A program made the translations under genes and the position numbers. This document shows, piece by piece, positions 3 through 12,050 of a DNA stretch of 12,228 nucleotides. Within the stretch, counting starts at the first letter, position 1. Every line of letters starts with the position of its first letter. Origin of the DNA: Vitrella brassicaformis CCMP3155 (taxonomy: Eukaryota; Protista; Chromerida); contig CDMY01000900.1 of assembly GCA_001179505.1 (NCBI GenBank), forward strand, positions 1-12,228, read 5' to 3'. The notes below the pieces were generated by a model. It ran no database searches, was not told the origin of the DNA, and saw nothing but the letters and a program-made list of their open reading frames with translations.

Positions 3-452
3 GCGACGATCCGGATGGCTCATCCGCTGGTGCTGGGCGCTCTCAAGACCAGCATCGGGCACCTGGAGGGGTCGGCAGGCATCTCGGGGCTCATCAAGCT
101 CATCCTCACTCTCCTGCACGGCGTCGCCCCGCCCAACCTGCACCTGAATCAGCTCAACCCCCACATCGACACGGACGGCTTCAACGTCCTCATCCCCACA
201 CAACCCGTCAAGCTCCTCAGGGCCAACAGGCAGCAGCATGGACAAGGCCAGAGCAGTAAAGACTCGTCATCGCCGACATCCTCATTGCCGAAGGAGTCAT
301 CGCCGAAAGAGAAATCGCCGAAGGAGTCATCCCCGACGTCGTCAGTGCCGACATCGTCAGCGACATCGTCAGTGACGACAGGCATGCCGGTCCTGGTGGG
401 CGGCGTCAGTTCCTTCGGCTTCGGCGGCGCCAACGCCCACGCCCTCATCCAG
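3..452 (+). other. Ketosynthase domain, C-terminal part
   Basis: GALKTSIGHLEGSAGISG (second catalytic His at 60-62), PPNLHLNQLNPHI and GVSSFGFGGANAH. The catalytic Cys and first His would lie upstream of the window. Confidence 0.92.
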
Positions 453-3400
453 TGCCACCCCATCAGCCAGTCGTCGACAACAACGGTGCAGGAGCTGCTC
501 GAGACGGGAGGTTTGTCAGCGGCGGCCCGGCAGTCTGAGAAGCGGAAGGTGGCGCTCATGTTCACGGGTCAGGGCAGCCAGTACGTCAACATGGGACGGG
601 AGCTGTACGAGAGCGATCAGGTGTTCCGCGAGGCGATTGGCCAGTGCGCGTCGGTGCTCGATCCGTATCTGTCGGCGCAGCACGAGGGCATCTCACTGGT
701 GGGGCTGCTGTACCCCGACTCGAGTGGTGAAGCTGACGAGATGGCGCGGCTCATCGACGAGACGCGCTTCTCTCAGCCCGTGCTGTTTGCTGTCGAGTAC
801 GCCCTGTACGCGTCGCTGTCTGCGCGTGGAGTGGTGGCGGATGTGGTCATGGGACACAGCCTGGGCGAGTACGTCGCGGCGACCGTGGCTGGGGTCATGT
901 CGCTGCCCGACGGGCTGCGTCTGATCGCGGAGCGGGCGCGCATCATGCACGCGAGCGATCCCAAGGATGGCGTCATGGCGGCCTGCCGACTGAGCCCTGA
1001 GCAAGTCGACGAGGCCATACAGGCGCTGCCAGCAGCATCGAGGAACGTGTCGCTGGCGGCGGTCAACGGCCCCAAGAGCGTCGTGGTGTCGGGTGCTCGC
1101 GAGCAAGTGGAGGAGGTCTTCAAGAGCCTACATGTCGGCAACCGATACAAGCTGCTGCCGGTGTCCCACGCCTTCCACTCGCCCCTCATGGCCGACACCG
1201 TCGACCACTTCAGGCAAGTCCTGCAGACCGTCGCCCTCCGTCCACCCACCATCCCCCTCGTCTCAAACGTCACCGGACACCTCGTCACACCTGACCAGCA
1301 ACCTGGCAGCACCACAACAGACTTGACCGACGTCGACTACTGGGCCCACCACATCACCCTGCCGGTCCGCTTCCTCGACGGCATCCAGACCACCATACAG
1401 CAGGCCGGCGCAAGAGTTCTCATCGAGGTCGGACCCAAACCCACGTTGATCAACATGGGCAAACAGTGCCTCAGGGGCGATGCACAGCCACTCGACCTTC
1501 AGTGGCTACCAACCATCGACCCGAAGACCGACGCGATCGGTTCCATGAAGGATGTTGTCGAGTCCGTCTCGTTCAAGGAGTCCGGCACCCACCAATGGAA
1601 GCATGACTTGTTCCCGTGGGTCGAGGTGGCTCATCCTGTGCTTGGCAAGCGTGAAGTGCTCGAGAAGGGTTCCAACTTCGAGGGTGTCCTGCGGAAGGAG
1701 GTGCGTGCGCTCATTTCAGAGCACATTGTCCTTGGAGCCGCCTTGATGCCCGGTGCTGGCTTCCTCGAAGCCATGAGTTCGGCTGGTGCGGCCGCAATGG
1801 AGCCTCCTCTTGGCCAGAGCCTTGATTTGTCCGGCAAGAAGAGGAGTGCTTACGATCTCGTGTGTCTTGAAGAGGTCATGTTCGAGAAGCCCTTGCGGCT
1901 CCTCAAGGCAAGATCTGGTGGGTCTGAGGAAGCCAAGGAACAGACGGTCCGCATCACAGTCAGTGGTGAGGAGGTGTCCAACCTGACTCACTGCTGCGCT
2001 CCACCGATGGCAATCGAGTTCCTCTCAAGAGCAGAGGGCGAGGATGACTTCTCGGCTCACGGGTCTGCTCGGCTCACGGCGTTTGCTCCACCAGACGAGG
2101 CGGTCACCAGTTCAGTGGAGGAGGTCGGCACAGTCAAGGAGCGGTGTCCTCACACCGCCGACATCTCATCCTTCTACTCGCAACTCAAGGCCCTGGGACT
2201 TCAGTACCAAGGGCGCTTCCAGACAGTCCAGGACATCGCAGTGGGAGACGACGAAGCCATCTCACGCCTCAAGCTGCCAGCCACCGCCGCCTTCGAGAGG
2301 GGCTTCCGCTTCCATCCGGCCCTTCTAGATGGAGCATTCCAAACAACTGCCGGCATCTTGGCGGCAATTGAGCCCAAGGACAGCGTTCGAACCAAGTCGA
2401 AGACTGTTCTCGTACCCGTGGGTGCGGAGCGGGTCTGTCTTGCGAAGCTTGATTCATCGCAGGAGGTGTGGAGTCACGTGAAGCTGGTTCAGAAGGACGA
2501 CAACGGCGTGCTCATCGACGTCACAATCCAGGACAGGCTCGGACGGCCAGTGGCTGTCTTGAACAAGTTGAGTCTGCGTCAGATGGAGACTACAGCCCCT
2601 GCAGAGATTCCCAGGGATCTTCTGTGGGAGACATCATGGAAGCAACAGGCCCTCCCTGCTGAGGAGGAAGACAAGACACACGAGCCCAAGCTGCAGGCAG
2701 CCCCCGATCTTGAAGAGGAGACCACCCACAGGACAAAGTCGAATTGCCTCGTCTTCGGTGCCGCCGGTGACTGGCAGCAAGCTACAGAGAGCTTCCTGTC
2801 AGCGACTGCGTCGCTTGGAGAGACGCGGGTCATCTGCCACGGTGACATGCCGTCGGCAGCCGACCTCGACAAGCTCTTGTCAGACAAGGAAGGAGACAAG
2901 CTGCTATGGGACAGCATCATCTACCTTGGAGGACTGATGGTCGACTCGCGGCCTCTCGAGGACAGCGAGATCGTGCTTGACGTCATGGGTGAGGTCCTAG
3001 AGCTGACGCAATCCCTTCTTCGTCTAGGAAGGACGATGGAGCTTCCAGCCGTGTGGCTCGCCACAGCAGGCAGTCAGAACTGTGAGACCAGCGGCCATGA
3101 CGAAGCAGGTATGAATGAAAATGTCATCCCCATTGCTCACAAACTTATCATGTACGTCTTCGCCGTGTGATCTTATATGTCTGTTATGCAGGAGACCTTC
3201 TGGCTCGTCACGCCATGCATGGTGGCTTGTGGGGCTTCGCAAAGGTGGCACGATTGGAGTCAGAGAACGGCCTCGGACAAATGATCCGCATGAGCTGCGT
3301 CGACCTGGATCGACGCACAGCGGACGCGGAGTCATTGCTGCAGCAGCTGCTCTGGGCAATCGACCGTGAGTGGCCCAAGGAGGCAAAGGACTATGAGCCA

Positions 3401-6400
3401 GAGATCGCAGTGCGCAACAACCACGCCGAGTCGCCGGGAGCTTACAAGCTCTACTACTCCCGAATGGTCAAGTCGTCTCTACAAGCCAGAGGACACTGTG
3501 AGCTGCAGCTAGGCAAGCGCGGCACCCTTTCCAGCCTGAGAGTGCGGCCAGTCTCCAACGATGGTCGCGAGTCTCCGGGTGCTGGCTGCGTGGAGGTGCG
3601 TGTGCGTGCGGTTGGTTTGAATTTCCGTGACGTGTTGAACGTGATGGGTCTGTATCCTGGTGACCCGGGTCCGCCTGGCGGCGATTGCTCGGGGACGGTC
3701 GTGAGTGTTGGAGCGGGTGTGACGCATCTGAGTGTGGGCGATGATGTGTACGGTGTTGCACCCGGGTGTCTGCGGACGTATGTGGCCACGGATGCCCACT
3801 TGATGGCCATCAAGCCGGTGACCATGTCGTTCGAGCAAGCCGCGGCGCTGCCAGTCGTCTTCGTCACGGTCCAAGTGGCCTTCAGGGAGCTCGCCAAGGT
3901 CACAAAGGGCGACAAGGTGCTCGTGCACGTGGCGACGGGAGGGGTGGGCTTGGCCNNNNNNNNNNNNNNNNNNNNNNNNNNNNNNNNNNNNNNNNNNNNN
4001 NNNNNNNNNNNNNNNNNNNNNNNNNNNNNNNNNNNNNNNNNNNNNNNNNNNNNNNNNNNNNNNNNNNNNNNNNNNNNNNNNNNNNNNNNNNNNNNNNNNN
4101 NNNNNNNNNNNNNNNNNNNNNNNNNNNNNNNNNNNNNNNNNNNNNNNNNNNNNNNNNNNNNNNNNNNNNNNNNNNNNNNNNNNNNNNNNNNNNNNNNNNN
4201 NNNNNNNNNNNNNNNNNNNNNNNNNNNNNNNNNNNNNNNNNNNNNNNNNNNNNNNCTCCGGTGGGCTTGGCCGCTCTGCAGTACTGCCAGCAAGTGGGAG
4301 CGACCGTGTTTGCGACGGCCGGCAGTGAGGCGAAACGGGACTACCTGCGCCAGACGTGTGGCGTCCAGTACGTGACCACATCGCGTGACGCCAAGCAGTT
4401 CAAGGAGGACATGCTGTCGTTCCTGGGGGGCGCCAGTAGTGGCAAGATCGATGTGGTCCTCAACTCGTTGATCGACGACTACATTCCCTTCTCTCTTGAC
4501 CTCATGGCACCCAACGGCCGCTTCATGGAGCTCGGCAAGCGCGAGACCTGGACCAAGGACAAGGTCGCCGAAAAGAGACCCGACGTCATGTACGAGCTCA
4601 TCGCCATAGATCGGTTCATTGAGGAGAACCCCTTGAGGGTCGAGAGCATCCTGAAGGACATGTCCGCCGGATTCGCTGCCGGGAGGCTGCCGCCTCTGCC
4701 AATGCACGTCTTCGACATGACCAGTCAAGACCAGCATTTGGGCGGTGTTGCAGGCTTCCGGTTCCTGCAGCGGGCGCAACACATCGGCAAGGTCGTCCTG
4801 AGGGTGCCGAACGCCCTTCAATCTGTCGACACCGTCTTGGCGTCGTCACAGAGCAGCGGTAGCTATGTCATCACGGGCGGCTCTGGCGGCATCGGCCTCT
4901 TGCTGGCCGAGTGGCTGGTGCACGAGGGAGCCAAACACATCGTGTTGGTGTCGAGACGCGGCAAGCCGTCCGCTGCCGTGGCTGCCACGGAGCTTTGGCA
5001 ACGCCTCACGGCAGCGTCCAACACATCCTTCAAGGTCCACTGCCTTGCGGCTGATGTGTCCAAGAAGGACGACTGCGAGAGGCTCTTCCAGCAACTGGCC
5101 GAGAGCATCCCTGATGCGCCTGTCAAGGGCATCTTCCACGCCGCTGGTGTGCTGGAAGACGCAACGCTCAACAACCAGACAAAGGACAACATCACCAAAG
5201 TCTACCTGCCAAAGGTGAGACCGAGAGAGTGGGCGGCGGACCTTCTAAGAAGGGGACTTCACTTCTTGTTTGTGCTTTTCTTCAGGTCATGGGAGCCTGG
5301 TATCTTCACGAGTTATCTCAGACATGGCCTCTGCCTCTTGACCACTTCATGATGTTCTCGTCGGTGGCGTCCATGCTGGGCAACTTCGGCCAAAGCAACT
5401 ACGCTGCAGCCAATGCGTGCCTCGACGCACTGACAGTCCATCGACGCTCGAGGGGATTTGCCGCACAGAGCATTCAATGGGGCCCCTGGGTGGAGCAAGG
5501 CATGGCAGCCAAGCTCCGCCAGCATTTGGACAAGGTCGGCATCAAGGGCATCTCCAACGAGCTCGGACTCCGCGTCATGGGCGACGTCATGAGCCACCAG
5601 CTGTCGACGCCCGCCAGGCCAGGAGTGGGTGTCATCGGTTGCCAGGCCCTCAACTGGCCTGTCTTCCTAGGGCGTCACGAGAGGGTTCCGAACCTTTTCG
5701 CTGACATCCCCATGGCATCTACAGCAGCCTCTGAAGGCAAGGGCAGCCTCGATCTGAGCAGAATGAGCAGAGACGAGCTGGGAGACATCCTGTGCTCACT
5801 CGCTGAGGAGGTGGCGGGATCGGGCGAGAGGCCGGAGCCCGACGCGCCTTTGATGGAGCTCGGGTTCGACTCGCTCGGCGCCGTCGAGTTCCGCAACGCT
5901 ATCGCAGACATGACGGGCGTCAAGCTGCCGCAGTCACTGGTCTTCGAGAATCCCAGCATCAACGACCTCGCCGACTTCATTCTCAGCAGAGCACCGACCA
6001 AGGGCAAGGACGAGCCGTCAGCTGATTCTGCTGAGGGAGTGGACGGGAGCAAGGCCAACGCCGAGGCGATCGCCAGCGGCACCACCAAGCCGTTCGACAT
6101 CATGTCACTGACGGTGGAGAAGTGGCTGCGGTTCACCTTCTCTGAGAACAAGCGCTACTTCCAGTACGTCGACGCCTTCGAGAACAAGTACCCGTCAGTC
6201 GACGCCATGTCCAAGGAGAGTGACGTCCACGGAGCGATAAGGTCCCTCAACGTCAAGAACGCGGAGGATACGCAGCTGATCGCAGCCGCGTGGGAGAAGC
6301 TCATCAGCGCTGACACCGCCGAGGCCAAGCCTGGCAGGAGGCAGAAGACCCCAGACGTGTACGACGACATGAAGATGTTGTCCGACTGGCTCGACACCGA

Positions 6401-9400
6401 GATTGCAGTCCGCATCAAGTCAGCTCTCCCTCGTGTGCCCCAGAGACGGGTCCGCCGCGTTCTGTTGACGGGCGTGACGGGCTTTGTCGGTCGCTGCCAA
6501 CTGGTGACATTGCTCGAGAGGGAGACGCCTGGGAAGCTCGTCGTGTGCTGTCTTGTGCGCGCCTCAAGCGTCGAGCACGGCCTCCAGCGAGTCCGTCAGG
6601 CCTGCACTGAGGCGAGGATATGGCGGGAGGAATTTGCTCACAGGATTGAGGTGCTGCCGGGAGACTTCACGCTTGAGGACTTTGGACTGGGAGAGAAGAA
6701 ATTCCAGGAGCTGTGCCGCTCAGTCGACATGGTAAGGAGGAAGAGGCAATCAAAGCAGACAGGCAAGACGATCACCTTCTGTTGTTCTGTCCTCAGGTGT
6801 ACCACACCGGTGCCGATGTGAATCTGATGAACAACTACGCCAAGCTGCGTCACACCAACACTCTCGCCATGAAGGGCGTCATCCGCGTCTGCGCCACACA
6901 CAGACTCAAGGAGCTCCACCACACGTCCACCCTGGGCGTATTCCCGGTGAGTGTAACGAATGCATGGAAGCATGCAGCATACACACATACAGTGAGTGCT
7001 TGTACACAATCGATTGGGATGTATGTGTGCTTGGATGTGTGTGTATATGTTTAATTAGGCCTTCTACGCGGCCTTCGGTCAGGAGTTCAGCGACATGAGC
7101 CCCATCATGGAGGGTGTGTCGCCCGACGAGAAGGAGATGAAGAAGTTCTTCCCTCCGACAGCCATCGGGTACCCCTGGAGCAAGTGGGCCACCGAGCAGA
7201 CACTCCGCAAGGCGCGCGACCTGGGCCTCCCCCTTTGCATCTATCGGCTGCCCAACACTAACCTGAGTCTGCGGACGGGCTTCACCAACCGCACCGACTA
7301 CCTCACGGCCCTTATGGTGTCCTCCATGCAAGAGGGCATGTTCCCTATCGGAGCCACCGCTGCGCCCTTCACACCCGCAGGTCAGACGACCTCACAAGGC
7401 AGTAGTTAGGCTAACGACTACAGATTCTCTTACTCTCTTGTGCGGCTTTTGTTGTGCGCAGACACCATATCTGAGATGCTGGTTGAGGCGTCCTTCCTTG
7501 AGAATCGCAAGCACTGGTTCTACCACCTGGTCGATGCGACCATCGTCACAAGGTACTTACTACTCGCACACAGCGTTCAGCTGGTACGACACTAGATACT
7601 ACATCTTGTCCCTCCCCCACTGTGCGTGCAGGCACGAGCTGGAGCGGTGGTCAGCTGACATGGGCGTGAGCTATCGCGGTGTCCATGTCCAAGAGTTCCT
7701 CAACGCTGTCAAGGAGAGAGGCCGAGTTTCTCCCGTCCATCGGTTCGTCCCACTCATGCAGGTGAGAATGGAACAACGAACCGTCCATGGAGGTAGGGGA
7801 TCCATCTCGTTGGTTGGTATCCCATTCCTTTAGCATTGGCGTCGGTATTGGTTTGACTCTGAGGAGCGGACCGAGCCGCTGCCAATCAGCAACAGACACA
7901 TCTTCGAGGACCTGCCCACCTTCAAATGGCCCAGTGGACGCGACGTCTTCCAGGCATCCTTTATGGTCAGTGAGGGAACGATGGAGGGAGAAACACCACA
8001 CCAGCTCGCACAAGTCAAACTGACCGGCTCGTTGTGCTCTTTGGCATCGTGTCTTCAGTACTCTTGCGAGTCTCGTTTCTTCATGCCCAACTCCAAGTCG
8101 ATCGGCATGGTTGCCGATGACATGGTGTCCCTGGCCAAGAAGAACGCCGGCCTCGCCACACTGCCGCAAGGGCTGCCTGGCGGGGATGCCTTCTTCACCC
8201 AGCCCATCCGGTCCCTCACAGAGAGCGCCAGACACGACGTCAAGCTGAGCTTCTTCGGACAGTTTGCCCTCTCCCGCACCGTCCACCAGCTGCTTAAGAA
8301 CGCCCTCTTCCTCCAGGCCATGGAGCAGCAGCACCCGGACATACTCCGCCAGTCCATCTCACAACCGCTCGTCATCGTGGGGCCGGATGTGCTCGGCAAC
8401 GCCTTCCTGCAGCTGCTCATGGCCCAGGACCCATCGAATCGCGTGCCGCGCTTCTGCGAAGTCAACTTCCCGTACGGCGAGGATGGATCATTCAGACCGA
8501 AGCGACTGCCCAATAACGCCCCATGGGAACAGGTGCGTACACCTGCACACCAGGGAACAGTGTTGCCTGGACCGATCCATGATGTGTGTATGTGTCTTGG
8601 TTTGCTCCTTCCTTCCTTGGCGCAGGACCCTCGCATGGCAGCCGCTCGGCGGCTGCTCGAGTCCTCTCCCATGCTGGGCAATGACTACATGTCCATCCTC
8701 CCCCGCAGTGGCGACATGCCCGAGGATGACACGGCCATATTCGAGCACTCACTCCGCGCGCACACCTTCTGCATGGGCTACGGCGCGCCGTCGTACGGCC
8801 AGTGGCTGAGGGAGTCTGATGGAGCGGAGATCAAGAAGGGCTACGCAATGCACAAGAGATTCCTCCAGCACCTGCAGTGGCAGCGGGCAGGCGACCGGTG
8901 GGTGCTCAAGATGCCCGCACACATGCTGGCTCTTGACGCGCTCTTCGAGACCTACCCCGATGCCAGGGTCATCTTCCTCCACAGGTGTGTGAGAATGGAC
9001 AACACACATACTGACACATGGGCTCTGTGGCATCCCTCTCACCGGTATACCTCTTCCTTTGCTTTTTTGTTTGTCATCAATTCATTCATTCAGAAACCCC
9101 AAGGTTGCCCTCGGGCCAGTGTGCAGGATCGTCAACTCTGTGCGCGAGAAGCTCATGGACGATGCTGACATGAGCGTCACAAGCCACCAGCAGGCGGAGC
9201 TCATGGCCGAGATGGTCAACACAGCCACAGAGTTCCGCCAAAACAATCCCGCGCTGAGGGGCCGGTTTGTCGACGTCACGACCGACGCGCTCGTCCGCGA
9301 TCCCGTGGGCACCGTGAGGAAGATCTACCGGCAGTGCGGGCTGGCCATGCCTCGGCGGGCGTCTCAGTCCATGTGGGACTTGGTCAGCCAGCACCGCGAC

Positions 9401-9706
9401 AAGCGAGACCAGCTCTTCAGGCAGCACGAGCCGCTCGACCAGTTCGGCCTCGACGAGGACGACCTGGACGAGGCCTTCCAGCCCTACTACTCTGAGACAA
9501 GGCAGATCCAGACGCAGCGCCGCTTCTCGCGCCTGATGCCCACATGCGGCGGTGGCAACACAATCGCGCGGAGGACATCCAGCCAAAGCGGGCGATGGCG
9601 GCGGCTGTCACTGCCACAGTCGCTGTCAGTCATGGCCACACGCCGTAGCGAATCGTATACCGTAAGCATCCGCCGTAGCGAATCGCAGAGACAGGACAGC
9701 AAGTAG
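3..9706 (+). CDS. 5'-partial multi-exon modular type I polyketide/fatty acid synthase, terminal module. Proposed join: <3..3108, 3192..3955, 4273..5214, 5286..6731, 6797..6946, 7059..7380, 7462..7552, 7632..7761, 7834..7965, 8059..8532, 8626..8984, 9094..9706 (8529 nt, ~2842 aa + stop)
   Basis: PKS domain motifs occur in canonical order across ORFs in all three + frames. Every frame change is explained by a GT-AG intron with consistent phase, or by the overlap at the N gap. The frame is open from base 3 (GCG ACG ATC CGG ATG), so ATG15 is internal. Confidence 0.93.
261..377 (+). repeat. Coding degenerate 15-nt tandem repeat (~8 units; DSSSP TSSLP KESSP KEKSP KESSP TSSVP TSSA TSSVT) inside KS
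   Basis: The first six units end in CCG at 275, 290, 305, 320, 335 and 350. Confidence 0.85.
546..1527 (+). other. cis-acyltransferase domain, malonyl-CoA-type
   Basis: MFTGQGSQY, QPVLF, GHSLG (Ser 858-860), HAFH (1167-1178) and LIEVGP. HAFH is the established malonyl-specificity motif. Confidence 0.92.
1632..2580 (+). other. Dehydratase domain
   Basis: HPVLG, HIVLGAALMP (HxxxGxxxxP, His 1722-1724), GLQYQGRFQ and HPALLDGAFQ (Asp 2328-2330). Confidence 0.9.
2620..3470 (+). other. Structural pseudo-KR subdomain (spans intron 1)
   Basis: Lies between DH and ER. Contains LLWETSW, VWLATAGSQ, GLWGFAKVARLE, CVDLD and EPEIAVR, which resemble psiKR signatures. Confidence 0.75.
3109..3191 (+). other. 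Intron 1 (83 nt, phase 1)
   Basis: GTATGA...ATGCAG; joins HDEAG to DLLARHA and removes the stop at 3168-3170. Confidence 0.88.
3490..4810 (+). other. Enoylreductase domain (interrupted by N gap)
   Basis: EVRVRAVGLNFRDVL..MGLYPG, VLVHVATGGVGLA|ALQYC, VFATAGS, DVVLNSL, GRFMELGK and HIGKVVL. Confidence 0.92.
3956..4255. other. Assembly gap 1 (300 N), probably spurious
   Basis: GGTGGGCTTGGCC is present at both 3943-3955 and 4260-4272, and the protein is contiguous across the gap. Confidence 0.85.
4861..5600 (+). other. Ketoreductase domain (spans intron 2)
   Basis: YVITGGSGGIG Rossmann motif, HAAGVLED (LDD-like, B-type-like), PK|V catalytic Lys, FSSVAS and GQSNYAAAN (catalytic Tyr/Asn). Confidence 0.92.
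5215..5285 (+). other. Intron 2 (71 nt, phase 0)
   Basis: GTGAGA...TTTTCTTCAG; restores the KR segment YLPK|VMGAWYLHE. Confidence 0.92.
5770..5990 (+). other. Acyl carrier protein domain
   Basis: LMELGFDSLGAVEFRN..LP.SLVFENPS; phosphopantetheinylation Ser at 5871-5873. Confidence 0.93.
6102..6308 (+). other. Putative SAM (sterile alpha motif)-like helical domain in the ACP-R linker
   Basis: By eye, TVEKWL...YFQYVDAFENK..SVDAM....IRSLNVKNAEDTQLIAAAWEKL follows the SAM pattern V..WL....Y...F.e.......L...LGi...g.r.kil.a...L. No HMM was run. Confidence 0.45.
6732..6796 (+). other. Intron 3 (65 nt, phase 0)
   Basis: GTAAGG...TCCTCAG; restores SVDM|VYHTGADVN. Confidence 0.92.
6947..7058 (+). other. 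Intron 4 (112 nt, phase 0)
   Basis: GTGAGT...TTAATTAG with GT-repeat-rich interior; joins GVFP|AFYAAF. Confidence 0.85.
7381..7461 (+). other. Intron 5 (81 nt, phase 1)
   Basis: GTCAGA...GTGCGCAG; removes the in-frame TAG at 7407-7409 and joins FTPA|DTISEML. Confidence 0.85.
7553..7631 (+). other. Intron 6 (79 nt, phase 2)
   Basis: GTACTT...GCGTGCAG; joins TIVT-R|HELERW. Confidence 0.8.
7762..7833 (+). other. Intron 7 (72 nt, phase 0)
   Basis: GTGAGA...TCCTTTAG; the terminal TAG is an in-frame stop if retained. Joins PLMQ|HWRRYWF. Confidence 0.85.
7966..8058 (+). other. Intron 8 (93 nt, phase 0, stop-free in frame)
   Basis: GTCAGT...TGTCTTCAG. Inferred from splice signals and composition only, because the frame stays open through it. 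Confidence 0.7.
8533..8625 (+). other. Intron 9 (93 nt, phase 0, stop-free in frame)
   Basis: GTGCGT...GTGTATGTGTCTTGGTTTGCTCCTTCCTTCCTTGGCGCAG; removal gives PWEQ|DPR, matching ST-family spacing. Confidence 0.78.
8985..9093 (+). other. Intron 10 (109 nt, phase 2)
   Basis: GTGTGT...TTCATTCAG; restores IFLH-R|NP, the HRDP-like motif. Confidence 0.88.
9641..9685 (+). repeat. 15-nt perfect direct repeat CGCCGTAGCGAATCG x2 (RRSES), 30-nt period
   Basis: Copies at 9641-9655 and 9671-9685. Confidence 0.9.
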
Positions 9707-9790
9707 AGCCCCAGTGAACGGTGAATGGATGTAGTGTTGGAGTGCATGCATGTCTTGTAGTGAATGTATGGGCGTCTGTGTGTGTGTGGG

Positions 9791-10090
9791 NNNNNNNNNN
9801 NNNNNNNNNNNNNNNNNNNNNNNNNNNNNNNNNNNNNNNNNNNNNNNNNNNNNNNNNNNNNNNNNNNNNNNNNNNNNNNNNNNNNNNNNNNNNNNNNNNN
9901 NNNNNNNNNNNNNNNNNNNNNNNNNNNNNNNNNNNNNNNNNNNNNNNNNNNNNNNNNNNNNNNNNNNNNNNNNNNNNNNNNNNNNNNNNNNNNNNNNNNN
10001 NNNNNNNNNNNNNNNNNNNNNNNNNNNNNNNNNNNNNNNNNNNNNNNNNNNNNNNNNNNNNNNNNNNNNNNNNNNNNNNNNNNNNNNNNN
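9791..10090. other. Assembly gap 2 (300 N)
   Basis: Run of N next to a GT-repeat; I saw no flank overlap. Confidence 0.98.
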
Positions 10091-10260
10091 TGAGAACGTT
10101 AATCTGAGCCTGTGAGCTTTGTGAGTGTGTGTAGTGTATGTCAGTCATGTCGTAGTAAAGTGCACCGACCGCACCTGCAGAAGAAAGAGGGACGGCCTGC
10201 CTGCCTGCCTGAGTTTTGAGAATCATAGTCTGTCTGCCTGTCTCATACATACTCTCTCTG

Positions 10261-10263
<3 letters not shown>

Positions 10264-10293
<30 letters not shown>
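10264..10293. repeat. (TGTC)n microsatellite
   Basis: Direct reading; a degenerate related tract lies at ~10587-10622. Confidence 0.95.
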
Positions 10294-10828
10294 CGAGTGT
10301 CATTGTCCAAAGTCAATCAAAACCCTGTTTTTTATTGTCCACACAACACACACTGGCCACCACTGAACGAATGGATCCCATCCATCTTCCCGGAGTGAGT
10401 GCATTGATTGCCGACTGGCAGTATGCACGGCACACTCTCATCCCTGTCCATCACCCACCCCCTCCTTGAGTCATTTTTCGTACCTTACTACCTCTCTGTC
10501 TTGTGTGATGAAGATCGATCGCAGCTGAGCCAGCCAGCGCTCCGTTGCACGCTGAGCGTCTGTCGGTGTGTATGGCGTGTGCGGTGTCTGCCTGTCCGTC
10601 TGCCTGTCTGTCTGTCTGTCTGGCTGTGGGGTGCATGAGTGATCCATCGATTGAATGCGGGAGACGAGCGCTTCAGTGAAGTGACTGACCTTGAGGCAAT
10701 AGCTCTTCCCCTGCTGCAGTGAAGTAAGCACGCGATGTGTGCAGTCGATGGATGACAGATGGATGACGATGAAGCCAACAGGGCTTCGGACAGTTTTGCG
10801 GTCTTGACTGTACTGTTTGGTGCACTGC

Positions 10829-10866
10829 TCTCTCTCCCTCTCCCTCCCTCTCTCCCTCCCTCCCTC
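10829..10866. repeat. (CT)n/(CCCT)n polypyrimidine microsatellite
   Basis: Direct reading. Confidence 0.9.
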
Positions 10867-11460
10867 CCGGTCTCTCGCTCTCTTTATTCGTATGTGTGTC
10901 TGTCTGTGTGTGATGTGGTGGCGCTATGGTGTCCGGCGGCTGTGGGTCGACCGCATCGAGGATTGTGATGATGCAACCCCCGCGAGCCATGCATGCGTGT
11001 CTGTCTTGTGTGCGTGTGTGTGGCTTTCTTCATCCTTCTTCGTGCTGTTCGCCAGTGCGTTCTCCTTTTTGCCGGATCGTTCCTCTTTTTGCCCTTTTTT
11101 TGTAAGAAAACCTCTTTCTGACGTGCCTCCCCCTGATAGCTCGGTGCCGCTCGCGATCCGTCCAGACATAGATACCATTGCCGGGTCGATGCGAGCCAAT
11201 CACATACGGCGCCTGTCTAGTCTTAAGTGCGTGTGGTGTGTCTGTGCCTCGTTCCCCCCATTGTGTATACTCGTCTCGTGAGTGTTTTGTTTGGGAGGTG
11301 GGACTAGAGGGGGGCGGGGCCATCTGATGATAATCGAACGAGGGAGGCAACTCTGACGGACTCGGGCTGGATCGATCGAATCTTAATGCTATCATTTTTC
11401 TTTCATGCATGCAACTTTGGGTGTCTGCATCACCCACTGCCTGCATCACGAATATCGCTC

Positions 11461-11544
11461 CCTGCCTGTCTGTCTGGCTGGCTGGCTGGCTGGCTGGCTG
11501 TCCGTCTGTGCGTGTGTGTGCGTGTGTGTGCGCGTGTGTGTGTA
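11461..11544. repeat. Compound microsatellite (CTGT)-(CTGG)n-(GT)n
   Basis: Direct reading. Confidence 0.93.
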
Positions 11545-12050
11545 TGGCTTTATATGACACCCATGATAGTCGACTGACTTGTAAGGGTGAGGATGACTGA
11601 AACTAGTGTGCGTGGACAGACAAACATCGTGTGTGCTGTGCCGCTTTGTGCCTTTGTCGATGGTCCATAGGACTCACTCAACGACTTACGGATTGCACAC
11701 CTTCAACATTACCGGAAAAGTCGAGAGACAACGCACATCACCTGTCCTCTCCGTTACGAGCCATGCATGATTACTTGACGTGTGTACAGAGTTCGAAGAG
11801 GTATTCAAGAAGGTCAAGCCGCTGGAGACACTGTGGAAGTCTTATATTCCTCCGGCGAGGCGATGCGCTCGTCGTCCACCCACACGATCTTCGAAGCCTC
11901 GCTCATGCCGAAACACTTGGGGCATCAGCAGTAGCTCGGGGTAGCGAGTAGGAAATTACTAGGAATGTAACGAAGCCAAAGAATTATTCAGTGACGATAG
12001 AGTGGCGAGATCTCCACAAGTTGGGATGCACGCAGCACATCTAATATAGA

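What the first reader, a model, noticed from the sequence alone, without database searches (positions are those of the whole stretch)
5770..9706. PKS ends in an ACP-(SAM-like)-reductase-sulfotransferase-like cassette, an unusual chain-release architecture
Seen: after splicing, one reading frame runs from ACP through an intact-looking R domain (TGVTGFVG, HTST, YPWSK) directly into a ~390-aa sulfotransferase-fold domain. Established: R domains release acyl chains as aldehydes or alcohols and normally end the protein. The known PKS-embedded sulfotransferases (CurM/OLS type) lie between ACP and a thioesterase and make terminal olefins. Here the order is R then ST, and there is no TE. Inference: this could be a reduce-then-modify or reduce-then-bind terminus, for example producing long-chain alkyl alcohols that are sulfated or handed on. 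I cannot say whether this architecture is already described in related alveolate FAS1/PKS proteins.
Basis: partly seen in the sequence, partly recalled or inferred. Interest (0 to 1): 0.82.

Follow-up and report, generated by a model that had tools for sequence, protein, structure and literature searches.

The report
Synthase tail: reductase fused to sulfotransferase-like
The tail of a giant lipid-building enzyme gene of the alga Vitrella brassicaformis really ends in a chain-releasing reductase fused to a sulfotransferase-shaped domain. This ending was already noted in 2013 in parasites and sponge bacteria, and this copy has lost the residues that normally hold the sulfate donor.

Summary
The window is a whole 12.2-kb contig of Vitrella brassicaformis. 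It carries the 3' part of a type I FAS/PKS gene: KS-AT-DH-ER-KR-ACP, a SAM-fold module, a thioester reductase (R) and a sulfotransferase-like (ST) domain, then a stop. There is no thioesterase.

- **Transcript:** spliced contigs from three runs show eight GT..AG introns, and all junctions keep one reading frame from ACP to the stop. The public gene model (P0151) and transcript peptides (P0001, P0152) join R and ST the same way.
- **Not unusual:** I found the same KR-ACP-R-ST tail in Chromera, gregarines, Selenidium, Rhytidocystis, Cardiosporidium and Digyalum, and R-ST as a separate protein in a sponge-type Acidobacteria swf cluster. Della Sala 2013 already described SwfB and coccidian FAS tails as contiguous R-ST. 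Bushkin 2013 drew a terminal ST on Toxoplasma and Eimeria PKS1. I found no biochemical test.
- **Specific to this copy:** the ST keeps the Stf9/Stf1 fold and 37 of 41 conserved columns. It has lost the PAPS-loop arginine and serine/threonines and the 3'-phosphate serine, so "reduce then bind" is more likely than "reduce then sulfate".
- **SAM-fold module:** the ACP-R module folds as a sterile-alpha-motif domain.
- **Earlier in the scan:** the same tail was found on four other pieces of this genome.

Verdict: new member of a known, untested kind.

The parts
3..5492 (+). Upstream part of the same gene: end of KS, then AT, DH, ER and KR (one fully reducing module). The contig starts inside KS, and the ER is interrupted by the N run 3956-4255.
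   Evidence: Pfam on ORF pieces; P0151 maps to window 3-9703 by tblastn; N runs.
5787..5981 (+). ACP (PP-binding) with the LGFDSL phosphopantetheine site.
   Evidence: PF00550, E 1e-14, aa 187-251 of the frame starting at 5229.
6090..6329 (+). SAM-fold (sterile alpha motif-like) five-helix module between ACP and R (P0151 1851-1930).
   Evidence: Conserved in chromerid and apicomplexan homologues, with W, F, Y, D, A, D and L invariant. AF2 pLDDT 86.6, five helices. Foldseek top 50 are all SAM domains. VIA-align Z 9.0-7, rmsd 1.6-2.7 A, mostly SAM domains. No Pfam match. Not found at the bacterial SwfA end or SwfB start.
6459..7965 (+). Thioester reductase (R) domain in six exons: 6459-6731, 6797-6946, 7059-7380, 7462-7552, 7632-7761 and 7834-7965. 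Carries TGVTGFVG, HHTST and YPWSK.
   Evidence: NAD_binding_4 in three pieces; TIGR01746 thioester reductase; nearest solved structure MxaA 4u7w, E 2.9e-37, with the STxS and YxxxK motifs aligned; splice joints.
8059..9521 (+). Sulfotransferase-like domain (Stf9/Stf1 type) in three exons: 8059-8532, 8626-8984 and 9094-9521.
   Evidence: Sulfotransfer_3 at 36.2 and 39.0 bits on the two pieces (cut-off 27) and 82.6 bits on the spliced peptide P0001. AF2 pLDDT 92.4, pTM 0.91. Foldseek 2z6v E 6e-19, TM 0.76/0.84, and 2zq5.
8380..8403 (+). Degenerate 5'-phosphosulfate-binding loop: GPDVLGNA where the family has G[LM][PN]R[ST]G[ST][ST].
   Evidence: Aligned to PRTGTT of Stf9. Motif table of 157 proteins. 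Arg/Lys is present in 139 of 142 relatives and the Ser/Thr positions in 123-136 of 142.
8908..8922 (+). KMPAH: the His is invariant across the family and retained here.
   Evidence: Invariant column H257 of alignment A3.
8980..9118 (+). 3'-phosphate-binding motif, split by the intron 8985-9093: HRNPKVALGP. The Arg is kept. The conserved Ser is Pro and Asp is Asn.
   Evidence: Arg is present in 141 of 142 relatives and Ser/Thr in 130 of 142; listed among the four differing conserved columns.
9522..9706 (+). Ser/Arg-rich C-terminal tail of about 60 aa and the TAG stop at 9704-9706. No further domain follows.
   Evidence: Translation. RNA-type contigs run through 9706 without a joint. P0001, P0152 and P0007 end at the same residue.
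6732..9093 (+). Eight GT..AG introns: 6732-6796, 6947-7058, 7381-7461, 7553-7631, 7762-7833, 7966-8058, 8533-8625 and 8985-9093.
   Evidence: Joints in X1, X2 and X7 and none in X3; dinucleotides checked.

Best explanation
The window holds the 3' part of a Vitrella brassicaformis type I fatty-acid/polyketide synthase. The last fully reducing module (KS-AT-DH-ER-KR-ACP) is followed on the same polypeptide by a SAM-fold module, an MxaA-like thioester reductase and a Stf-type sulfotransferase-like domain.

Shown:
- One spliced reading frame runs from ACP to the stop, with no TE.
- The R domain has an intact NAD(P)H motif and Ser/Thr-Tyr-Lys residues.
- The ST-like domain belongs to a distinct clade of reductase-linked sulfotransferases, shared with apicomplexan FAS/PKS tails and bacterial SwfB.

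Inferred:
- The saturated acyl chain on the ACP is released reductively by R as an aldehyde or primary alcohol, as in MxaA and CpFAS1-R.
- In canonical members of the cassette the neighbouring ST would then sulfate that alcohol with PAPS to give an alkyl sulfate. This was proposed in 2013 and, as far as I found, never tested.
- In this copy the arginine and all three Ser/Thr of the 5'-phosphosulfate loop and the serine of the 3'-phosphate motif are replaced, while the fold and nearly all other conserved residues are kept. The domain most likely no longer uses PAPS. It probably survives as a non-catalytic partner of R, for example binding or handing on the lipid product, or scaffolding.
- The SAM-fold module may hold the tail in an oligomer.
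For: - Domain order and absence of a TE.
- Eight splice joints in three runs, in phase.
- Identical joins in P0151, P0001 and P0152.
- R domain: TIGR01746 and MxaA at E 2.9e-37 with catalytic motifs aligned. CpFAS1-R reduces C20-C26 acyl thioesters (PMC2995488).
- The same KR-ACP-R-ST tail in Chromera, Gregarina, Selenidium, Rhytidocystis, Cardiosporidium, Digyalum and a Vitrella paralogue.
- A bacterial swf-type cluster with an R+ST protein.
- A quick tree puts all 16 R-linked STs on one side of a 99% SH-aLRT branch, apart from 71 stand-alone STs.
- ST fold.
- Specific loss of PAPS residues: 2 of 7 phosphate-contact positions are kept, against 37 of 41 generally conserved columns.
- The degenerate loop is identical in the 93-95% identical Vitrella peptides P0001 and P0152.
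Against: - No enzyme activity, cofactor binding or product was measured, here or in the literature I could search.
- Loop main-chain amides could still bind a nucleotide, and the 3'-phosphate Arg and the invariant His and Glu-type residues remain. Residual or altered-donor activity is therefore not excluded.
- Purifying selection on the ST-like domain was not measured, because I held no DNA of a second strain.
- The splice evidence comes from short assembled contigs that are only guessed to be RNA, so each joint is seen separately rather than on one long read.
- The tree is a quick search without bootstrap.
Confidence: 0.62

Rival explanations
1. Active reduce-then-sulfate terminus. R makes a long-chain primary alcohol and the ST domain sulfates it with PAPS despite its odd loop, so the gene makes alkyl sulfates.
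For: The cassette is conserved from bacteria to Myzozoa with R and ST always adjacent. The invariant His, the 3'-phosphate Arg and 37 of 41 conserved columns are kept. An alkyl sulphate product was proposed in PMC3908369.
Against: The loop Arg/Lys is present in 139 of 142 relatives but is Val here. The three Ser/Thr are Leu, Asn and Ala. An Asp sits in the loop. The 3'-phosphate Ser is Pro. From general knowledge of sulfotransferases, these side chains hold the 5'-phosphosulfate and 3'-phosphate of PAPS.
Confidence: 0.2
2. The ST-like domain is a decaying relic without any function, on its way to being lost. Only the R domain matters for release.
For: All chromerid PKS-linked STs are off-consensus in the PAPS motifs. 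An earlier unchecked note describes a sister gene with a shortened tail (s1-233275).
Against: The changes are concentrated in cofactor-contact residues, while 37 of 41 conserved columns and a confident fold are kept. The domain is transcribed and spliced in frame through three exons. It is kept intact in the 93-95% identical Vitrella peptides P0001 and P0152; the paralogue P0007 also has a full ST, but its N half is only about 40% identical.
Confidence: 0.12
3. R and ST are separate genes or an assembly/annotation chimera, so the fusion is not real.
For: The evidence is from short contigs, and paralogues share near-identical 3' parts that can mislead assemblers.
Against: A chain of in-phase GT..AG joints links R exon 7632-7761, the 132-nt exon 7834-7965 and ST exon 8059-8532 in three runs from two studies. 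The same fusion occurs in more than ten other species. There is no stop or start context between the domains.
Confidence: 0.03

Closest known systems
SwfB of the swf clusters of sponge symbionts (Della Sala et al. 2013, PMC3908369), with a present-day example in Acidobacteria MAG SB0661_bin_38 (locus L003)
   Same: Contiguous thioester reductase plus Sulfotransfer_3 domain, acting after a fully reducing KS-AT-DH-ER-KR-ACP synthase. Its ST falls in the same reductase-linked clade.
   Different: SwfB is a separate protein of about 840 aa next to B12-radical-SAM genes. It has canonical PAPS motifs and no SAM-fold module. Here R-ST is fused in cis to the synthase and the PAPS motifs are degenerate.
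[quoted passage not shown]
   Same: The same KR-ACP-(SAM-fold)-R-ST order in cis with no TE. The ACP-R module and the R-ST junction are conserved.
   Different: The apicomplexan copies keep GLNRSGTT and HRDPxxxxxSW. The Vitrella copy has GPDVLGNA and HRNPKVALGP.
Chromera velia Cvel_19857, Cvel_3734 and Cvel_17954, and the Vitrella paralogue CEL93275.1
   Same: Chromerid megasynthase tails with R-ST whose PAPS motifs are also off-consensus.
   Different: They keep the loop Arg, and the window's gene is the only one of these without it. Chromera and Vitrella STs form separate clades.
CurM / olefin synthase ACP-ST-TE terminus
   Same: A sulfotransferase-fold domain embedded at the end of a PKS.
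   Different: There the order is ACP-ST-TE and the sulfate serves as a leaving group to make a terminal alkene. Here the order is ACP-R-ST with no TE. Structural similarity to 4gbm and 4gox is only TM about 0.3/0.45, against 0.76/0.84 for Stf9.
MxaA and CpFAS1-R terminal reductases
   Same: NAD(P)H-dependent reductive release from an ACP. MxaA is the nearest solved structure. CpFAS1-R is the characterised apicomplexan example.
   Different: Neither has been described with an attached ST in the sources I read.

Membership tests
Thioester reductase (R/TR) domain, NAD_binding_4 / TIGR01746 | Rossmann TGxTGxxG nucleotide motif | tested here: met
   TGVTGFVG at P0151 1977-1984; NAD_binding_4 profile matched from position 1.
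Thioester reductase (R/TR) domain, NAD_binding_4 / TIGR01746 | Catalytic Ser/Thr plus YxxxK | tested here: met
   HHTST and YPWSK align to YVSTVS and YAQSK of MxaA 4u7w.
Thioester reductase (R/TR) domain, NAD_binding_4 / TIGR01746 | Reduces an ACP/CoA thioester to an aldehyde or alcohol | not testable with these tools
   Needs an enzyme assay. Only the CpFAS1-R precedent exists (PMC2995488).
Sulfotransfer_3 / Stf-type PAPS-dependent sulfotransferase | Sulfotransferase fold and profile match above Pfam's cut-off | tested here: met
   36.2, 39.0 and 82.6 bits against a cut-off of 27; Foldseek to 2z6v and 2zq5, E 6e-19 and 1e-17.
Sulfotransfer_3 / Stf-type PAPS-dependent sulfotransferase | 5'-phosphosulfate-binding loop PR[ST]G[ST][ST] | tested here: not met
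   GPDVLGNA: the Arg and all three Ser/Thr are replaced, and only Gly is kept.
Sulfotransfer_3 / Stf-type PAPS-dependent sulfotransferase | 3'-phosphate-binding motif HRDPxxxxxS | tested here: not met
   HRNPKVALGP: Arg kept, Ser replaced by Pro.
Sulfotransfer_3 / Stf-type PAPS-dependent sulfotransferase | Invariant His of the K-x-P-x-H strand | tested here: met
   H2596 lies in the only fully invariant His column of 94 sequences.
R-ST release cassette (SwfB / apicomplexan FAS tail) | R and ST contiguous on one polypeptide after a reducing PKS/FAS module | tested here: met
   the same order in homologues.
R-ST release cassette (SwfB / apicomplexan FAS tail) | ST belongs to the reductase-linked clade | tested here: met
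   A 99% SH-aLRT split in a quick IQ-TREE; the window groups with Vitrella paralogues.
R-ST release cassette (SwfB / apicomplexan FAS tail) | Product is an alkyl sulfate | not testable with these tools
   Only proposed in PMC3908369. I found no biochemical paper.
CurM/OLS ACP-ST-TE olefin-forming terminus | ST lies between ACP and a thioesterase | tested here: not met
   No TE domain in any piece; the order is ACP-R-ST-stop.
SAM (sterile alpha motif) domain | Five-helix SAM fold | tested here: met
   AF2 pLDDT 86.6. SAM domains fill the Foldseek list and nearly all of the VIA-align list. Scores are modest for so small a helical domain.
SAM (sterile alpha motif) domain | Sequence match to Pfam SAM families | tested here: not met
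   No SAM family among the Pfam hits of the seven aligned modules, even at E up to 10.

The most novel reading that the evidence does not exclude
In chromerids the sulfotransferase of the ancestral reduce-then-sulfate cassette has become a conserved pseudo-enzyme. It keeps its fold and lipid-facing residues but no longer binds PAPS, and it acts as a product-binding or hand-off partner of the reductase. A previously undescribed SAM-fold module between ACP and R, shared by chromerids and apicomplexans but absent from bacterial SwfA/SwfB, oligomerises the release end of these megasynthases.
Probability: 0.3. Interest if true: 0.55.

Novelty: new member of a known kind. Interest (0 to 1): 0.3.

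Why it matters
The products of the many fully reducing megasynthases of chromerids and apicomplexans, including the abundant oocyst PKS1 of Toxoplasma and Eimeria, are unknown. The R-ST tail is the best clue to what leaves the enzyme: a fatty alcohol or an alkyl sulfate. This window adds a transcribed chromerid example with exact exon structure. It shows that the cassette forms one clade from sponge-symbiont bacteria to Myzozoa. It also gives a natural contrast between canonical and PAPS-loop-dead versions that could be used in a simple assay. The claim of an unusual new release architecture does not hold.

Tried and rejected
- **Exon joining:** I searched the pieces by reference and then used the database's own protein P0151 and its sub-ranges.
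- **NCBIfam:** nothing on the ST pieces.
- **PDB profile search of the ACP-R linker:** it found only the start of R domains. Pfam on the linker found no SAM family. The SAM reading rests on predicted fold only.
- **The search for related loci with the broad ST alignment:** failed for lack of a conserved stretch. A narrower alignment found a single bacterial locus, so the bacterial spread of SwfB was not surveyed.
- **Literature:** searches for a biochemical follow-up of SwfB, for R-ST or alkyl-sulfate synthases, for SAM domains in PKS and for Stf9 details gave nothing usable.
- **dN/dS:** not done, because I held no DNA of the second Vitrella strain.
- **Careful tree:** the search did not finish in time, so only the quick tree is reported.
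- **CurM/OLS-type reading:** rejected on domain order and weak structural similarity.
- **Coccidian sequences:** not re-fetched. That part rests on the two papers.


Full report
**What is in the window.** The window is GC-rich (about 60%), intron-bearing eukaryotic DNA with two runs of N at 3956-4255 and 9791-10090. Pfam on the long + strand reading-frame pieces gives this order:
- end of KS, AT and DH (15-3170);
- ER (3167-3950 and 4258 onward) and KR;
- PP-binding (5787-5981);
- NAD_binding_4 in three pieces;
- Sulfotransfer_3 in two pieces.

No thioesterase is found. NCBIfam adds the thioester-reductase model TIGR01746.

**One transcript.** I laid four public runs on 5770-9706. Three of them (X1, X2, X7; two studies) hold spliced contigs with eight GT..AG joints. 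The fourth (X3) runs through the introns like genomic DNA. With the stated cut offsets the introns are 6732-6796, 6947-7058, 7381-7461, 7553-7631, 7762-7833, 7966-8058, 8533-8625 and 8985-9093. All of them begin with GT and end with AG.

Counting phases on the three-frame translation, every junction keeps a single frame from the ACP through R. The frame continues through a 132-nt exon (7834-7965) and three ST exons to TAG at 9704-9706. RNA-type contigs pass 9706 without a further joint.

The runs are assembled contigs only guessed to be RNA, and each joint sits on a short contig. This is therefore a chain of junctions, not one long molecule.

Independent support comes from the protein databases. 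The exhaustive search with the ST exon returned P0001, a 690-aa Vitrella brassicaformis transcript peptide, 95% identical over the matched stretches. Its cluster holds P0151, the 2820-aa public gene model of this very 12,228-nt contig. P0151 maps to window 3-9703 and has exactly the joins that I derived. From here on I used P0151 and its sub-ranges.

**How common the tail is.** The search found 2987 relatives of the ST at E no higher than 1e-3. Many of the best are long proteins with the ST at their C-terminus. Pfam on their tails gives three patterns:

| Tail | Proteins |
|---|---|
| KR - PP-binding - NAD_binding_4 - Sulfotransfer_3 | P0005, P0010, P0013, P0033, P0034 |
| PP-binding - R - ST | P0002, P0006, P0046 |
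| R - ST | P0003, P0022 |

By the sources' own names these are:
- Rhytidocystis pertsovi, Gregarina sp. Poly1, Gregarina niphandrodes ('putative type I fatty acid synthase'), Selenidium pygospionis, Cardiosporidium cionae and Digyalum oweni;
- three Chromera velia genes (Cvel_19857, Cvel_3734, Cvel_17954);
- a Vitrella paralogue (CEL93275.1).

A pattern scan of bacterial genomes found one locus, in an Acidobacteria MAG. There the KR-ACP end of a PKS is followed by two B12-radical-SAM genes, an 846-aa R+ST protein and an MFS transporter. That is the swf cluster of Della Sala et al. 2013.

**What was already published.** Della Sala et al. state that SwfB is a fusion of a thioester reductase and a sulfotransferase. 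[quoted passage not shown] They also say the expected product would be an alkyl sulphate, untested (PMC3908369). Bushkin et al. 2013 drew Toxoplasma and Eimeria PKS1 with a terminal ST (PMC3760245). A survey of algal biosynthesis notes that chromerid PKS modules are nearly all fully reducing, but it does not mention the tail (PMC7073580). I found no biochemical study of any R-ST pair.

**Tree.** A quick maximum-likelihood tree of 94 ST domains puts all 16 reductase-linked STs, plus seven short sequences that are probably fragments, on one side of a branch with 99% SH-aLRT. The 71 stand-alone STs lie on the other side. The bacterial SwfB-type sequence is basal in the reductase-linked group, on a long branch (1.87 changes per column) that the tool flags as of unsure placement. 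The window's ST groups with Vitrella paralogues, and the three Chromera STs form their own clade. The careful search did not finish, so this is provisional.

**The reductase.** The nearest solved structure is MxaA, the terminal reductase of the myxalamid pathway (4u7w, E 2.9e-37). The Ser/Thr and YxxxK motifs align. From my own knowledge, MxaA reduces the thioester through the aldehyde to the primary alcohol. The characterised apicomplexan example, CpFAS1-R, acts only on C20-C26 acyl thioesters (PMC2995488). Reductive release is therefore the expected chemistry here. It is an inference.

**The sulfotransferase-like domain.**
- By sequence, the closest solved proteins are the mycobacterial sulfotransferases Stf9 and Stf1.
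- An AlphaFold2 model of P0151 2340-2775, built on 94 sequences, has pLDDT 92.4 and pTM 0.91.
- The model matches Stf9 (2z6v, E 6e-19, TM 0.76/0.84) and Stf1.
- The PKS-embedded CurM and olefin-synthase STs match only weakly (TM about 0.3/0.45). The fold claim holds, and the domain is not of the CurM type.

The cofactor site is altered. The table gives counts over 142 aligned relatives.

| Position | Relatives with the usual residue | This window |
|---|---|---|
| 5'-phosphosulfate loop, Arg/Lys | 139 | Val |
| Loop Ser/Thr, three positions | 123, 130 and 136 | Leu, Asn, Ala |
| 3'-phosphate motif, Arg | 141 | Arg (kept) |
| 3'-phosphate motif, Ser/Thr | 130 | Pro |

The window reads GPDVLGNA and HRNPKVALGP where the family has G[LM][PN]R[ST]G[ST][ST] and HRDPxxxxxS. 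So it keeps only the loop Gly and the 3'-motif Arg. In contrast, of 41 columns at least 85% conserved among the other 93 sequences, the window keeps 37. The four exceptions are the loop Arg, the 3'-motif Ser and two conservative changes, Glu to Asp and Asp to Asn.

The loss is thus targeted at PAPS contacts rather than general decay. Pfam accordingly matches the spliced peptide only from profile position 68, whereas the homologues match from position 1. The other chromerid PKS-linked STs are also off-consensus but keep the loop Arg, while the apicomplexan ones are canonical. This agrees with the separate first-stage note s1-199367 on this window, which I tested here.

**The SAM-like module.** Between ACP and R lies a module of about 75 aa (P0151 1851-1930, window 6090-6329).
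- It is conserved in chromerid and apicomplexan homologues.
- AlphaFold2 predicts five helices, pLDDT 86.6.
- Foldseek's top 50 hits are all sterile-alpha-motif domains. The E-values are weak (0.2-2), with TM to target 0.6-0.8.
- An independent all-against-representatives alignment again lists mostly SAM domains, with Z 9.0-7 and rmsd 1.6-2.7 A over 62-77 residues.
- These scores are middling for a small helical domain. The uniformity of the hit list is the argument.
- There is no Pfam sequence match, and nothing like it at the bacterial SwfA end or SwfB start.
- In the ten best-ranked papers of one search for a SAM domain in a PKS, none contained the phrase 'sterile alpha motif'.

**Mechanism and verdict.** I commit to the following:
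- The last module builds a saturated chain on the ACP.
- R releases it reductively as an aldehyde or alcohol.
- The ancestral role of the adjacent ST was to sulfate that alcohol.
- In this Vitrella copy the ST-like domain most likely cannot use PAPS. It persists as a non-catalytic partner, for binding, hand-off or scaffolding.

The architecture is neither unusual nor new. It is the routine, published, but biochemically untested tail of chromerid and apicomplexan megasynthases and of bacterial SwfB.

The scan had already met the same tail on four other pieces of this genome, and the follow-up agents reached the same verdict (s1-205475, s1-205548, s1-197154, s1-233275). I read those notes after reaching my own conclusion, and they did not change it.

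Noticed in passing
window 8880-9706; proteins P0007, P0152: Vitrella ST paralogues are mosaics. P0007 is only about 40% identical to the window's ST over its first 260 aa, but 90-100% identical from FLQHLQWQRAGD to the end, and the last 110 aa are identical. P0152 combines the window-type N part with the P0007-type C part. Contigs of X2, X7 and X3 leave the window at 8894. This points to gene conversion between paralogues, or to assembly chimeras at a shared stretch.
   Followed up: partly
window 9522-9703: The last 60 or so residues form a Ser/Arg-rich tail with several RRxS-type motifs (RRTSS, RRLS, RRSES twice). The tail is identical in the paralogue P0007. It could be a phosphorylation-regulated or targeting tail.
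   Followed up: no
window 8533-8625: This intron is 93 nt, in frame and free of stops. A retained intron would insert 31 aa into the ST-like domain without breaking the frame.
   Followed up: no
window 3956-4255 and 9791-10090: Two 300-nt runs of N. The first lies inside the ER domain, so the public gene model P0151 skips part of the ER. The contig also starts inside KS, so the number of modules in the gene is unknown.
   Followed up: partly
L003 (Acidobacteria MAG SB0661_bin_38, VXMN01000125.1) 17-9871: A complete-looking swf-type cluster: the KR-ACP end of a PKS, two B12-radical-SAM genes, an R+ST protein of 846 aa and an MFS transporter. It was the only bacterial genome locus found by the pattern scan.
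   Followed up: partly
L001 (JGI metagenome contig Ga0666101_000954) 1-13450: A multimodular PKS of more than 4100 aa is followed, with a 23-nt overlap, by a separate PP-binding-R-ST protein of 1149 aa. This is an intermediate arrangement between the cis-fused and SwfB-like forms. The organism is unknown.
   Followed up: no
window 5807-7160, run X2: Run X2 (a different coded organism or strain) differs from the window at many single positions, for example 14 within 6225-6730. This is consistent with the 93-95% identical peptides P0001 and P0152 from another Vitrella strain or allele.
   Followed up: no
window 10100-11600: Downstream of the gene the DNA is rich in short GT/CA-type and CAGA-type repeats. 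Their translations read TDRQTDRQ or VCLSVCLS. I saw no convincing ORF there.
   Followed up: no
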